64,000 nt of DNA. Source: Ascidiella aspersa (lineage: Eukaryota). The notes below the pieces were generated by a model. It was not told the origin of the DNA, did not search any database, and saw only the letters and a program-made list of their open reading frames with translations. Positions within the stretch are counted from its first letter, which is position 1. Each line of letters opens with the position of its first letter. Shown here piece after piece: positions 1-15,875 of the stretch. Where the stretch lies: the NCBI GenBank assembly GCA_963924565.1, contig OZ004608.1:30442001-30506000 (forward strand). The letters run 5' to 3'. A program made the translations under genes and the position numbers.

Positions 1-1114
1 AGGTATCGGACATCCCTCAACAAAACCATGAAACGGCCTTTACCTTTTGTAGCGCGGCGGGGAAACAATAAAATATACAACAGTTTAACCCGACAGTAAA
101 AAATGCGCAGCCCGCGTGATAGTGGCCCGAAAAAAGGTGTTTAAAGCTTCGTTATTGATACATGTAGACATGTGATGGTTATCTAATCCATTACTGTGGT
201 TATGTAGTCAAAAGTAAAATCCGCATCTGAAAATTGAATATGCCAAATTTAGTGCAGGTTTTGTTAACCAGGGGTACGTGTACCCCTTGGTGGTACACCC
301 CTTGGTGGGATGCACCAAAACAGGCGTACGACATGCAGTGTGAAATTATGCGCTCTTTGGGCATATTTGTGAACAAGGCGTAATTACGAAAAGCAACAAC
401 AAAAAAGCCATTAGTATACAAGCATGTTTTTAATGCATGCATTCAACACGTAATTTATAAATACACTGAGTTTAACTCCTATTATTACAATTTGATTTAC
501 TTCCGTCGACCATCGTAGACAGGGGTACGAGAAAATTTCATGAAAACTCGTAGGGTAGGCAATGGTTAAGAGACACTGACTTAATGTCTGGCTAAAGCGG
601 ATACGACGTATCACGAAATTAGACCACATAATTTGTTATAATTTTTTTTTTAAATGTTACCAGAGTTGGATCTTGTAAGTAATGTTTTTTGACCACCAGC
701 TTGGCGTCTTCCACGATACAAAGACTTTAAAATCCACGACGGTGATCCGAGGGTTTTCGATATCTGCCAACCACAAAAATATAAAACAGAGATAGTAACA
801 AATTAATGGTGCATATAAATAGCCTTTAAAAAAGTTTTAGCAAAACTATCCTTTTTATACACGTTGCAATTGTAAACTTTTCTAACGATGCCGTGTTGAT
901 TGTTAAAAAACAAAAAAACAAATAGAAACTGTAATGTTAACAGATAAAGAACGTATCTGCACATTTAAGCCCATATTTACAATGTTATGGTTAATAATTA
1001 CCGAGCCCGGGCCTTACGGTAATTTGTAGATGGCGTAGAAGTGTTAGTGGCATCAACCTTCTGTGACAATACATTGAACAGTAAAACGAAAACGCTGAAG
1101 TTTAAAGCGTCCAT
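1..1114 (-). CDS. 5' part of a secreted/type I membrane FN3-domain protein resembling class II cytokine receptors (IL-10RB/IFNR/tissue factor family); runs off the left edge
   Basis: Exons 1114-1018 (ends phase 1), 763-661 (ends phase 2) and probably 37-<1, all GT-AG. They splice in frame to MDALNFSVFVLLFNVLSQKVDA-TNTSTPSTNYHIENPRITVVDFKVFVSWKTPSWWSKNITYKIQLWPFHGFVEGCPIP. This is a signal peptide followed by an ENxRxxxVxFKxxxxWxxP...NxTYxxQ...C pattern. The third-exon acceptor is less certain. Confidence 0.65.
255..578. mobile_element. Degenerate hAT-type MITE in intron 2 of the receptor-like gene (same family as 27700-28059)
   Basis: Ends are CAGGTTTTGTTAACC...GGTTAAGAGACACTG. The interior closely matches 27700-28059 (e.g. 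GGGGTACGAGAAAATTTCATGAAA). Degenerate 8-bp flanks ATTTAGTG/ACTTAATG. Confidence 0.75.
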
Positions 1115-9275: not shown

Positions 9276-9900
9276 AAGTGGCTATTTGACCGGATCGCTC
9301 TTTTTCGCTTAGGCTAACACGTAATTATTGATTAAGTTGGTTTAGGGTGTGGGTTAGCGTTTGGGTAGTGGTAGTATTGAGTGTTGTAAACAAGTCATTT
9401 GTAAAAATACCTTTCGTTCAAGTCAAGTCTTTTCAAAAAGTTCTGGTCATCAACTGTCAGGTCATTATTAGAGCAGGTCATCTCCAGACTCCAAGTCAAA
9501 CCACTTCTATAATAATGAAACTAAAAATAAACAAAGCAACAACATGCAGTAACCTAATCGTTTTCGTACAAAACTTTAGATAAATAACTCAATTTTTTAA
9601 TAAAATGTTGAATGAAAACATTTAATTTTAGCCCTAATCATTCTACTCAAGTTCAAGTCAAGGCATTTGTCTTAAAGACTTTAGTCAAGGCGAAGTGATT
9701 TTACCAAAACGAAGTTAAGTCATTTGAAAACAGTGACTTAAGTTAAGTCATTCACTTAATTTATTACAACACTGGTAGTGTTAGATTTAATTTTCCGAGT
9801 TTTGCATAGTTTGAATATTTTTTTTTCAAAAATGGATTTAAATTACTTTGTTTTTCACTGAACTCTCATAAAGGCTATTTGGCCGGATCTTTCTTTTGTC
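9276..9900. repeat. Dispersed repeat with a GT-rich (TTAGGG-like) core, interrupted by a MITE; uninterrupted copy at 41586-41805
   Basis: Both copies share GAAGTGGCTATTTGAC...ATCGCTCTTTT, AGCGTTTGGG, TTAGATTTAATTTTC, GATTTAAATTACTTTGTT and GGCTATTTGGCCGGATC. Confidence 0.75.
9379..9774. mobile_element. GACTT-rich hAT MITE family copy
   Basis: Ends are GAGTGTTGTAAAC...TTACAACACTG, with TSD GTAGTATT/GTAGTGTT. Same family as 46001-46506, in opposite orientation. Confidence 0.85.
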
Positions 9901-11110: not shown

Positions 11111-11350
11111 ATGTTGAGTACGTGGGTTGTCTTTGCTATCATCAGTGGATTTTGGCTTGGTGTTGGAGCAATCGGGCCATGGCTTGTGCCAAAAGGTTAC
11201 TACAAGGGTGTCTACCAGACAATGATCGTTACCACCGCTGTGTGCTGCTGGCTCCATTGGTTTATCACCTACTGCTCACAAATAAACCCCCTCATCGGCC
11301 CTCAACTGACCAATGGCATGATCTACATGATGATGTGGGTCTGGGATTAA
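11111..11350 (+). CDS. ATP6V0E: V-type proton ATPase subunit e (79 aa), single coding exon
   Basis: Two TM helices with family motifs FWLGVGAIGPWLVPKG and TTAVCCWLHWFITYCSQINPLIGPQL. Start context AAAATG; splice acceptor TTTTAG ending at 11085. Confidence 0.95.
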   Translation: MLSTWVVFAIISGFWLGVGAIGPWLVPKGYYKGVYQTMIVTTAVCCWLHWFITYCSQINPLIGPQLTNGMIYMMMWVWD

Positions 11351-13496: not shown

Positions 13497-15875
13497 CAGT
13501 GGTTCTCAAACTGTGGTACGCGTACCACTAGTGGTACGCAAGAGCTTTTTAAGTGGTACGCGAAGATTTTGGCGTTATTTTATTGTATTTAATCTACAAT
13601 TTGCCATTCTTTGCAGTAGCTAAAACTACTATAAATACACGACAATATAACAATAAGTTAACTGTAGAACAATTTCACGTTGGCATTATTGCGTCATAGT
13701 TGATCCTAACAAACAAAACTAAGCAACTGATGAGATGAGCTCATTAGTAACTGGAGCTATAACAGGTTAATAGATCAGTATAGTAAGCAGGATATATTTT
13801 AAGCATGTCGAAACGAATAAAATCCAGAAATACATCAAGTATGGGTTCATTGCAATCGAACATGCAGGAGAGTGTTTGCCACAGTGTGTGGTTTGCATGA
13901 AAACCCTTTCTAATGCGGCCATGAAGCCAAGTTTGTTAAAACGGCACCTTGACTCAAATCATGCAGAAAAAAAGAACCGAGATCAGAGTTATTTTGAGCG
14001 ACTTGGGGTGAACACGAAAAGACAACGCCTAGACAAGACAGGCCAGTTTCATCAAAAGAAAGTAGGGATAGTAAAATCGTCATATGAAGTGTCTCTTCTG
14101 GTAGCTCAGAATATGAAAGCTTATACAATCGCTGAGTCCCTGGTTTTACCAGCAGCAAAAATCCTAGTCAAGAACCTGATCGGAGAAGAGGCAGCGGACA
14201 AACTGAACAGCGTGTCCCTTTCTAACGACTGTAAAACGACGTATTCAAGATATGTCTGTTGACATTGCTGAACAAGTGATTGCTGGAGCAAAAGACTCAA
14301 AGTTTGGATTTTCCATTCAACTCGATGAGTCAACAGATGTCTCCAAGTGTAGCCAACTGCTAGTTTATGTCCGCTTTATCCAAAATGACACGGTAAAAAC
14401 GGAGTTAATGTTGAGTCAGGAGCTGGCTACTACAACAAAAGGAAAGATGTATTCAACGTTTTGGACAATTTTTTCAAGGAGAATGACCTGGATTGGAAAA
14501 TGTTAGTTGGATGCACGACGGATGGTACTCCAGCAATGCTTGGAAGAAAGTCAGGATTTCAAGCATATGTGAAAGATGTATCACCAAAAGCTACCTTTGT
14601 CCACTGTTTTATCCATAGATTTGCACTTTGCGCCAAAGTGCTTCCTTCTGATTTAATGTCATGCTTGAACAAAATAATTAAGATTGTGAATTTTATAAAA
14701 ACATCAGCTCTAAATACTCGGCTATTTGCAGGGCTCTGTGAAGATGTCGGTTCTGATCATAAGTGTCTTCTCTTTCACACAGAGGTTCGCTGGCTTTTCC
14801 GCGGGAATGTGACAATGAGGGTCTTTGAACTTAGGCATGAATTACTGACCTTTTTCAAAAAGAAAAAACACGACTTTAAATATGATTTAGAGAACGAAGA
14901 GTTTATTTTACAGCTGGCCTACATGTCGGACATTTTTCAGGCCCTAAACTTTGTAAATCTTTCGTTCCAAGGACCGAACAGCAATATAACAGTTTTTATT
15001 ACAAAACTGAAAGCATTTATTTGCAAACTTGATATATGGACTAAAAACGTGGAAAATAAACAATACGGAATGTTTAAACAGCTTAGCACTCTTTCAGTTG
15101 ACCCCAGTGACAAATTATCTCAAGAAATTGCTGACCACCTTAAGTTGCTCAAAACGGAATTGGTGCATTATTTTCCAGATTTTGAAAGTTGCACCTACGC
15201 TGTCAATCCATTCTGCACCAATCCAGTTGTTCTACCCGTAGGAACAGGAGAACAAGAAGACGTAATAAGAATATCAAAGCCCATACAGAAGTAGGTATCA
15301 TTTTGAACGTTTCGAATAACTCTTTATTTCATTTTCAACATTTCATTTTTCAACATCTTATTACGTCTTACTACAACCTCCAACCATTATGCTCCAAAGA
15401 ACAAGAAGAGATAATTGATATTCAGGTTGACGAAACAGCAAAAGCAAAGCAGAAGGAATGCTCTTCTATAAATTTCTGGTTATCCATAAGTTCCACTTAC
15501 CCAACATTGGCCCGAAATGCTGTTCCTCAGCTATTAGTTTTCCCCTCGACATGGGAGTGTGAGTAAGGGTTCTCGGCCTTAATGGCCATTAAGTCGAAGA
15601 GCCGGAATCGTCTAACTGAGCCTAAAAACGATTTTCGATGTGCTGTGACTAATGTTGTGCCCCGGATAGACAAGCTTGTGCAAAAGAAACAGTTGCACCT
15701 ATCACATTAAAATGTGTTTTCTTGCTGTTAACTCGTATTGCGTTATAGTAATAACGGTAATAACTAATAAATACTGGTACATTTGAGTATAGTAATTTAT
15801 TCAGAGCCAGGTGGTACGCAAGGTAGTAGTGAATGAAGAAGTGGTACGCCATCGGAAAAAGTTTGAGAAACACTG
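13497..15875 (+). mobile_element. Full-length-type Buster/Charlie hAT DNA transposon
   Basis: TIRs CAGTGGTTCTCAAACT/AGTTTGAGAAACACTG, perfect TSD GTTTAGTG, subterminal GTGGTACGC repeats, and transposase sequence inside. Confidence 0.93.
13805..15710 (+). pseudogene. Inactivated Buster-group hAT transposase (ZBED5/ZBED8/SCAND3-like)
   Basis: Motifs: BED finger PQCVVC...KPSLLKRHL..H, IQLDESTD, CTTDG, HCFIHR, HTEVRWL, STWECE*GFS and a C-terminal KQLHLSH. Lesions: frameshifts near 13820, 14230 and 14445, a 149-nt insertion at 15261-15409 and a premature TAA near 15564. Confidence 0.92.

What the first reader, a model, noticed from the sequence alone, without database searches (positions are those of the whole stretch)
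1..1114. Hidden class II cytokine receptor-like (IL-10RB/interferon receptor/tissue factor) gene in an apparently invertebrate genome
Seen: three short minus-strand exons, absent from the ORF track, splice into a signal peptide plus HIENPRITVVDFKVFVSWKTPSWWSKNITYKIQLWPFHGFVEGC. Known (recalled from memory, not searched): human IL-10RB begins PPENVRMNSVNFKNILQWESPAFAKGNLTFTAQYLSYRIFQDKC. The two align without gaps at EN, R, V.FK, W..P, N.T, Q, F and C. The intron phases also follow the class II receptor pattern: phase 1 after the signal exon, phase 2 shortly after the TYxxQ strand. Inference: this may be a pre-vertebrate member of the interferon/IL-10 receptor family, whose ligands and function outside jawed vertebrates are poorly known.
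Basis: partly seen in the sequence, partly recalled or inferred. Interest (0 to 1): 0.85.

Follow-up and report, generated by a model that had tools for sequence, protein, structure and literature searches.

The report
Divergent receptor-like gene in sea squirt

Summary
Exons 1 (1114-1018) and 2 (763-661, minus strand) read as stated, with canonical splice sites and phases 1 and 2. The third exon (37-1) is rejected. Its acceptor is poor, it meets a stop 34 nt left of the window with no usable donor, and its 'GCPI' is coded by the inverted end of a dispersed MITE-like repeat.

A better exon 3 lies 290 nt left of the window. Eight in-frame junctions then give a 1119-nt reading frame: signal peptide, about 175 aa of beta-sandwich ectodomain, a strong membrane helix, and a tail of about 140 aa. 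Forced intron phases (1-2-?-0-1-0) and cysteine motifs fit class II cytokine receptors.

Sequence tests do not show membership. No exon hits Pfam Tissue_fac, while single exons of two genuine paralogues in this genome score 28-29 bits. IL-10RB is the only PDB hit for exon 2, at E 0.9. Domain 1 as modelled lacks its last strands, three donors are weak, and no RNA evidence could be obtained.

The genome is a tunicate. Class II receptors are published for Ciona and amphioxus, and this scan already noted four such genes elsewhere in this genome. Verdict: plausible divergent member of a known kind, unproven.

The parts
1018..1114 (-). Exon 1: start codon, signal peptide (hydrophobic core FSVFVLLFNVL) and about 15 further residues; donor C|GTAAGG, phase 1
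   Evidence: In-frame TGA 21 nt upstream of the ATG. Codon-usage score in the top 3.4% of stop-free random segments.
764..1017 (-). Intron 1 (254 nt), GT...AG
661..763 (-). Exon 2: first half of module 1 (strands A-C, ...DFKVFVSW...NITYKIQL); phase 1 in, phase 2 out
   Evidence: The only PDB hits are IL-10RB residues 6-36, E 0.9. Codon score in the top 2.9%. No Pfam hit.
250..580 (.). SINE-like dispersed repeat inside intron 2
   Evidence: At least 40 copies at 71-81% identity across the chromosomes.
21..170 (.).
4..17 (.).
   Evidence: 13 of 14 nt complementary; dispersed copies whose matches end at this terminus. A second copy lies in intron 5.
1..37 (-).
   Evidence: codon score not different from random, 0.36.
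1..660 (-). Window part of intron 2. The gene continues left of the window on the minus strand. Exon 3 is C2:30441601-30441710 (window -399 to -290). Exon 4 is 30438500-30438651. Exon 5 is 30435349-30435514. Exon 6 (membrane helix) is 30434540-30434673. Exon 7 is 30434056-30434126. Exon 8 is 30433836-30433909. Exon 9 with its stop is 30432461-30432672.
   Evidence: Exon lengths sum to 1119 nt, which is 373 codons with the stop.

Best explanation
The finding is the 5' end of a real, unannotated gene of about 10.7 kb and nine exons on the minus strand of a tunicate chromosome.

What the sequence shows: the gene encodes a type I membrane glycoprotein of about 372 aa. It has a signal peptide, an ectodomain of about 175 aa built from beta-sandwich (fibronectin-III-like) modules each split over two exons, one membrane helix followed by a basic stop-transfer stretch, and a cytoplasmic tail of about 140 aa that is acidic, serine-rich and carries several tyrosines.

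What is inferred: it is most likely a very divergent, lineage-specific relative of the class II helical cytokine receptors (the interferon/IL-10 receptor and tissue factor group). If so, it would bind a secreted helical ligand at the elbow between the two modules and signal through a kinase docked on the tail. No ligand, no kinase-binding box and no expression have been shown.

The true third exon starts 290 nt left of the window, directly after a MITE insertion.
For: Gene reality:
- Eight splice junctions keep one frame over 1119 nt.
- All acceptors and the donors of exons 1, 2, 6, 7 and 8 are good.
- The two longest open frames on this strand in 10 kb (113 and 115 codons, about 0.2 expected by chance) are exon 5 and the membrane exon.
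- All nine exons score above the null mean on a codon-usage measure (individual tails 0.03-0.20; Fisher combined p about 3e-4).
- Exon 6 has a 19-residue hydropathy of 2.28.
- There are 8 N-glycosylation sequons in the ectodomain exons against 2.8 expected from shuffles (P 0.003), and only 1 in the tail.

Class II resemblance:
- The phases forced by the open frames are 1, 2, 0, 1, 0. The third is 1 with the best acceptor of exon 4. The published pattern is 1-2-1-0-1-0 (PMC8863823; bioRxiv 10.64898/2026.05.30.728932).
- A genuine paralogue's first-module exon has the same 1-to-2 phases and ends at the same strand.
- Exon 2's only PDB hits are IL-10RB at the homologous N-terminal position.
- Exon 3 carries W-x4-C-x10-C-E-F, like the C-x7-C-D-L of the paralogue.
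- Exon 5 carries 'NYCVWA', like the paralogue's 'EYCVTM'.
- There is no WSXWS motif.
- Exon 5 resembles the C-terminal half of an Ig-like sandwich (Pfam Big_3_5, 19.9 bits; Atlas).
Against: - No exon hits PF01108 or PF09294, even at E 10, and the genome-wide six-frame scans with those families do not pick this locus. Single first-module exons of two genuine paralogues score 28-29 bits.
- There is no pairwise or profile similarity to those paralogues, and no paralogue of exon 2 or exon 5 anywhere in the genome.
- The IL-10RB match (E 0.9) is not significant, and it is the feature the finding was selected on.
- Module 1 as modelled has only about 71 residues and lacks recognisable F and G strands.
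- A nest of repeats starts 59 nt after exon 3.
- The donors of exons 3, 4 and 5 (GTATTC, GTATAG, GTTGCT) are weak, and stronger out-of-phase donors sit nearby.
- The usual C-terminal cysteine partner in module 2 is present only if exon 5 runs 6 nt further to an even weaker donor.
- No proline-rich kinase-binding box is evident.
- No related protein was found among 1.84 billion representatives. This is uninformative, because this species' own proteins are not in that library.
Confidence: 0.45

Rival explanations
1. It is a real gene for a lineage-specific type I membrane glycoprotein with FN3- or Ig-like modules that is not homologous to cytokine receptors, for example an adhesion or recognition molecule. 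The phase pattern and cysteine motifs are convergent or generic beta-sandwich features.
For: Every sequence and profile test for class II membership failed, while the controls passed. The only family-level signals for exon 5 are generic Ig-like sandwiches. An alternative parsing (module 1 = exons 2, 3 and the first half of exon 4; a short 80-residue module 2) would move the phase-1 intron off the domain boundary. No kinase-binding box is seen.
Against: Five forced intron phases match the class II and class I receptor pattern (about 1 in 240 if phases were random). Both modules are split at the canonical strands. The W...C...C-E-F and YC motifs sit where class II receptors have them. The only PDB hit of exon 2 is a class II receptor at the homologous position.
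Confidence: 0.3
2. It is a damaged or decaying copy of such a receptor gene. Repeat insertions after exon 3 removed or separated the end of module 1, and three donors have drifted, so no full-length receptor is made.
For: Module 1 lacks its last strands. A high-copy repeat begins at L009:9542, and the in-frame stop at 9526 lies inside it. The donors of exons 3-5 are weak. No extra exon with coding-like composition was found in intron 3.
Against: All nine exons stay open over 372 codons in a 36% GC genome where stops arise easily. All acceptors and the 3' donors are intact. Codon usage is coding-like in every exon. Sequon enrichment is confined to the ectodomain.
Confidence: 0.17
3. It is a chance chain of open frames and splice-like sites, not a gene.
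For: No transcript, no homologue and no annotation were available. The individual exons are short.
Against: Nine in-frame exons with a signal peptide, a membrane helix of hydropathy 2.28, topology-consistent sequons, a combined codon-usage p of about 3e-4, and strong splice sites at the 3' exons.
Confidence: 0.08

Closest known systems
Class II helical cytokine receptors (CRF2/CRFB: IL-10R2, IFNAR, IFNGR, IL-22R and others; Pfam Tissue_fac plus Interfer-bind)
   Same: Type I topology. Two roughly 100-aa modules each split over two exons. Intron phases 1-2-1-0-1-0. A Trp...Cys...Cys-[DE]-[LF] motif in module 1. 'YC' in the F strand of module 2. No WSXWS. Exon 2 aligns without gaps to IL-10R2 residues 6-36 (E 0.9).
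   Different: No profile match for any exon. Module 1 is about 30 residues short as modelled. The Cys-Cys loop is 10 residues rather than 7. The second cysteine of module 2 is doubtful. The tail is spread over three extra exons (nine exons rather than seven). No recognisable kinase-binding box. The ligand is unknown.
Tissue factor (F3)
   Same: It belongs to the same fold family and has the same phases in the ectodomain exons. Its D1 Pfam model (PF01108) is the one genuine tunicate paralogues match.
   Different: Tissue factor has a 21-residue tail in the same exon as the membrane helix. Here the helix exon splices on to a tail of about 140 aa. There is no profile match.
Ascidian and amphioxus class II receptors already reported (Ciona GI:198428337, Branchiostoma GI:260796075; PMC3210801), and the genuine paralogues of this genome at C7:10318294 and C1:16248406
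   Same: Same phylum-level context. The first-module exon has the same phases (1 to 2), and the motifs are similar (...L-x-W..., C...C-D-L, LTYK, YC).
   Different: Those paralogues pass Pfam's Tissue_fac cut-off with single exons (28-29 bits). This gene does not, and it shows no BLASTP or hhalign similarity to them.
Class I cytokine receptors (gp130, Domeless type)
   Same: A related two-module fold and a similar exon-phase logic.
   Different: No WSXWS motif, and no pair of cysteine bridges in the first strands of module 1.

Membership tests
Class II cytokine receptor (CRF2) | Module 1 matches Pfam Tissue_fac (PF01108) | tested here: not met
   Exons 2 and 3 give no hit at E up to 10, and the locus is not picked by the six-frame genome scan. 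Positive controls: single exons of two paralogues score 28.4 and 29 bits. The test was done exon by exon only; the joined product was not searched.
Class II cytokine receptor (CRF2) | Module 2 matches Pfam Interfer-bind (PF09294) | tested here: inconclusive
   Exons 4 and 5 give no hit. The module 2 exons of a genuine paralogue also give no hit at exon level, so the test has no power here.
Class II cytokine receptor (CRF2) | Gene structure with intron phases 1-2-1-0-1-0 (PMC8863823) | tested here: met
   Phases 1, 2, 0, 1, 0 are forced by the open frames and AG/GT positions. The third is 1 with the best acceptor of exon 4. Caveat: the in-phase donors of exons 3-5 are weak, and there is no RNA confirmation.
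Class II cytokine receptor (CRF2) | Signal peptide, D200 ectodomain (two complete FN3 modules of about 100 aa), single membrane helix | tested here: inconclusive
   The signal peptide and the helix (hydropathy 2.28) are present. The ectodomain is about 175 aa. Module 2 is about 105 aa, but module 1 is only about 71 aa, with no F or G strands found.
Class II cytokine receptor (CRF2) | Module 1 disulfide pair (C'-E strands, Cys-x7-Cys-Asp-Leu/Phe after a Trp) | tested here: met
   Exon 3 reads W-x4-C-x10-C-E-F. The paralogue reads W-x5-C-x7-C-D-L. The loop is 3 residues longer here. This is a motif reading only.
Class II cytokine receptor (CRF2) | Module 2 disulfide ('YC' in strand F paired with a Cys after strand G) | tested here: inconclusive
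   'NYCVWA' is present. A later Cys (...HVPGC) is coded only if exon 5 extends 6 nt to the donor T|GTTTGC, which scores -5.1.
Class II cytokine receptor (CRF2) | Membrane-proximal kinase (JAK) binding box and STAT-docking tyrosines; cytokine binding | not testable with these tools
   The tail has tyrosines (for example ...NPYIRL...) but no obvious proline box, and no Pfam hit. Function needs experiments.
Class I cytokine receptor | WSXWS motif before the membrane helix | tested here: not met
   The end of exon 5 reads ...NESPKSYATVNVQHVP. There is no WSXWS.
Generic fibronectin type III (PF00041) | Profile match to fn3 | tested here: not met
   No fn3 hit for any exon. Whole FN3 repeats elsewhere in this genome sit in single exons.

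The most novel reading that the evidence does not exclude
Sea squirts carry, beside their Pfam-recognisable class II receptors, at least one further paralogue that has diverged beyond sequence recognition and keeps only the family's exon-phase skeleton and cysteine motifs. That would mean the pre-vertebrate interferon/IL-10-type receptor repertoire is larger and faster-evolving than catalogues based on profile searches suggest, with ligands still undiscovered.
Probability: 0.35. Interest if true: 0.5.

Novelty: new member of a known kind. Interest (0 to 1): 0.3.

Why it matters
How the interferon/IL-10 cytokine system arose before vertebrates is an open question. Receptors of this class are reported in Ciona and amphioxus, but their ligands and signalling are unknown. 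A recent preprint places interferon-like ligands in lancelets but not in other invertebrates (bioRxiv 10.64898/2026.05.30.728932).

If this gene is a genuine, expressed, very divergent paralogue, it adds a candidate receptor chain to test against candidate tunicate ligands. It would also show that profile-based counts underestimate the family. If it is only a generic FN3 protein or a damaged copy, it is ordinary.

Tried and rejected
I did not resend trimmed letters, and read laying was therefore not used.

2. Joined product.

3. Library search with exon 5. phmmer against 1.84 billion representatives gave only bacterial MBG-repeat proteins that share a YTVSxLTxAGNY-like strand motif. I rejected these as analogy. 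The library lacks this species' own proteins: the best match to a conserved V-ATPase subunit is 80%.

4. PDB searches. Exons 3, 4 and 5 gave nothing. A candidate extra exon (L009:8753-8625) gave only archaemetzincin at E 0.2.

5. Completing module 1. Five routes were tried:
   - Reading through the donor at L009:9601. This has non-coding-like codon usage and runs into a repeat and a stop.
   - Treating the repeat as an insertion into the exon. Alignment of the copies shows the supposed 'resumed exon' is still repeat.
   - Extra exon L009:8753-8625. Weak splice sites and a random codon score.
   - Extra exon L009:8874-8793. Strong sites and fitting phases, but the worst codon score (0.98 tail).
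   - Extra exon L009:8252-8162. Random codon score.
   None is accepted.

6. Short tail. A tissue-factor-like short tail, made by reading through the membrane exon to the stop at L009:2365, is rejected. It is non-coding-like (0.85 tail), whereas the donor CTG|GTAGGA joins three well-spliced tail exons in frame.

7. Interfer-bind hits. The six-frame hits on C8 and at C2:15.16 Mb are ordinary single-exon FN3 repeats, not class II receptors.

8. No neighbouring receptor genes. The flanks hold a MINDY-3/4 gene and a V-ATPase subunit e gene.

Full report
Location and organism. The window is G000:C2:30442001-30506000 of a 308.6-Mb assembly. GC content is about 36%. The genome is a tunicate, on two lines of evidence. 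First, a chromosome-scale contig carries an exon matching glycoside hydrolase family 6 at 33.8 bits; among animals this domain is known only from the tunicate cellulose synthase (established knowledge). Second, a conserved V-ATPase subunit e encoded in the window has Clavelina lepadiformis as its best named relative (66%), ahead of Branchiostoma (50%). No 100% match exists in the protein library, so this species' own proteins are not in it. Earlier notes of this scan also call the genome a sea squirt.

The observation. On the minus strand, ATG at 1114 follows an in-frame TGA 21 nt upstream. Exon 1 (1114-1018) encodes a hydrophobic leader and ends C|GTAAGG in phase 1. Exon 2 (763-661) follows ...ttggcag| and ends TG|GTAACA in phase 2.

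- Its acceptor (aaaggtaaag|) has no pyrimidine tract and scores -1.9, against +2.4 to +4.1 for the other acceptors.
- Its frame meets TAA 34-36 nt left of the window, and the only GTs before that give phases 0 or 1.
- Window 4-17 is the 14-nt terminal inverted repeat of a 259-bp MITE-like element whose other end is at L009:9759-9772. The genome holds at least 40 dispersed partial copies, several ending exactly at this terminus. This repeat end codes the 'GCPI'.
- Window 21-170 recurs at 97-99% identity on chromosome C6.
Its codon usage is indistinguishable from random.

The gene as I read it. L009 is the 10 kb left of the window; genome coordinate = 30432000 + L009 position.
- Exon 3 (L009:9710-9601). 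Directly after the MITE, a strong tandem acceptor (ttttttcag|cag|) opens this exon. The TG left by exon 2 plus C gives Cys, and the exon reads ...W-x4-C-x10-C-E-F...LTYKP.
- Exon 4 (6651-6500). It starts in phase 1 behind a good acceptor and reads like FN3 strands A-C.
- Exon 5 (3514-3349). It starts in phase 0 behind ...ttattccccag| and reads like strands C'-G, with NLTHAGNYCVWA.
- Exon 6 (2673-2540). It enters in phase 1, encodes a 23-residue hydrophobic helix (hydropathy 2.28) followed by SRKAVKRIKR, and leaves in phase 0 at CTG|GTAGGA.
- Exons 7 (2126-2056), 8 (1909-1836) and 9 (672-461, including the stop). They have good sites on both sides and continue the frame into an acidic tail rich in serine and tyrosine.
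The nine exons sum to 1119 nt, or 373 codons.

Is this more than chance?
- The two longest open frames on this strand in 10 kb are exon 5 and the membrane exon. About 0.2 frames of that length are expected.
- I built a crude codon-usage log-odds from 895 codons of other genes of this genome. It places all nine exons above the null mean of stop-free random segments, with tails of 0.03-0.20 and a Fisher combined p of about 3e-4.
The training set is small and partly made of beta-sandwich exons, so this is supportive rather than decisive.
- N-glycosylation sequons number 8 in the ectodomain exons (2.8 expected, P 0.003) and 1 in the tail, as expected for this topology.

Weak points of the model.
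- The in-phase donors of exons 3, 4 and 5 (GTATTC, GTATAG, GTTGCT) are poor, and better out-of-phase donors lie within 22 nt.
- Module 1 (exon 2 plus exon 3) has only about 71 residues and stops at the start of the F strand.
- A high-copy repeat built of TGACGTCA-containing units starts at L009:9542. The stop that closes the read-through lies inside it, and further repeats follow to about 8896.
- I found no credible exon for the missing strands.
The gene may therefore have an exon I cannot see, a non-canonical first module, or damage.

Family tests.
- Pfam finds nothing for exons 1-5 at E up to 10.
- The genome-wide six-frame scans with PF01108 and PF09294 do not pick this locus.
- The test has power for module 1. 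The PF01108 scan finds two genuine class II-type genes, at C7:10318294 and C1:16248406, whose single exons score 29 and 28.4 bits.
- The test has no power for module 2, because the genuine paralogue's module 2 exons also give no hit.
- BLASTP and hhalign between my exons and those paralogues find nothing beyond the B-strand tryptophan.
- Exon 2 and exon 5 have no paralogue in the genome.
- Against all PDB chains, exon 2 returns only IL-10 receptor beta, residues 6-36, at E 0.9-1.4. Exons 3-5 return nothing.
- Exon 5 weakly resembles the C-terminal half of Ig-like sandwiches.
- Its best hits among 1.84 billion representatives are bacterial repeat proteins that share a strand motif.

What does speak for class II.
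- The phases forced by the frames are 1, 2, (1), 0, 1, 0. This is the pattern given for class II receptor genes (PMC8863823) and called ancestral for them (bioRxiv 10.64898/2026.05.30.728932).
- The genuine paralogue's first-module exon has the same phases and ends after the same strand.
- The Trp...Cys...Cys-Glu-Phe and Tyr-Cys motifs sit where the paralogue has Trp...Cys...Cys-Asp-Leu and Tyr-Cys.
- WSXWS is absent.
Class I receptors share much of this exon logic, and other FN3 genes can too, so this is suggestive only.

Steps left out. That joined profile search and structure prediction is the decisive computation, and it was left out. 

Novelty. One class II receptor each has been pointed out in Ciona intestinalis and Branchiostoma floridae (PMC3210801, citing Krause and Pestka 2005). 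This scan has already noted four class II-like receptor genes on other pieces of this same genome, and one of them was followed up as an intact seven-exon gene. I confirmed two Pfam-positive ones myself. If the present gene is accepted, it would be a further and far more divergent member of a known kind.

Verdict. Interest is modest.

Noticed in passing
window 4-17 with L009:9759-9772; second copy at L009:2988-3258: A MITE-like family of about 260-270 bp with terminal inverted repeats TAGGGATGTCC(G/A)ATA. One copy sits just upstream of exon 3 and another lies in intron 5. Many partial copies are spread over the genome.
   Followed up: partly
L009:9542-9271 and L009:6466-6284 (C2:30441271-30441542 and 30438284-30438466): A high-copy repeat (762 first-look candidates) whose 5' part is made of tandem units containing the palindrome TGACGTCA (a CRE-like site). 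Copies lie 59 nt after exon 3 and 34 nt after exon 4.
   Followed up: partly
window 21-170 and C6:5121617-5121767 (L030:1494-1644): A 150-bp stretch that is 97-99% identical between two chromosomes, with unrelated flanks. It is too similar for the old repeats around it. Its origin is unexplained (a recent capture, a gene conversion or a young element).
   Followed up: partly
window 250-580: A SINE-like repeat in intron 2 with at least 40 copies at 71-81% identity.
   Followed up: no
L009:9711-9705: The acceptor of exon 3 is a tandem cag|cag (NAGNAG). Both choices stay in frame and differ by one serine.
   Followed up: no
window 11111-11350 (+): A single-exon gene for V-ATPase subunit e (Pfam ATP_synt_H, 74.9 bits). 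The closest library protein is 80% identical, and the best named one is from Clavelina lepadiformis at 66%.
   Followed up: yes
window 13876-15566 (+): Overlapping long open frames (128, 84, 277 and 125 aa) that look transposase-like by eye, but the two frames scanned have no Pfam hit.
   Followed up: partly
L010:7310-7531 (+) (C2:30429310-30429531): An exon of a MINDY-3/4 deubiquitinase gene (71.5 bits). It is the left neighbour of the receptor-like gene.
   Followed up: partly
C7:10318294-10318428 (L011) and C1:16246936-16250100 (L012): Two genuine class II cytokine receptor/tissue factor-type genes whose single exons pass Pfam's Tissue_fac cut-off. In L012 the module 2 end and the membrane helix share one 126-aa open frame.
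   Followed up: partly
C5:19613851-19614090 (L039:1501-1740): A glycoside hydrolase family 6 exon (33.8 bits), presumably part of the tunicate cellulose synthase gene.
   Followed up: partly
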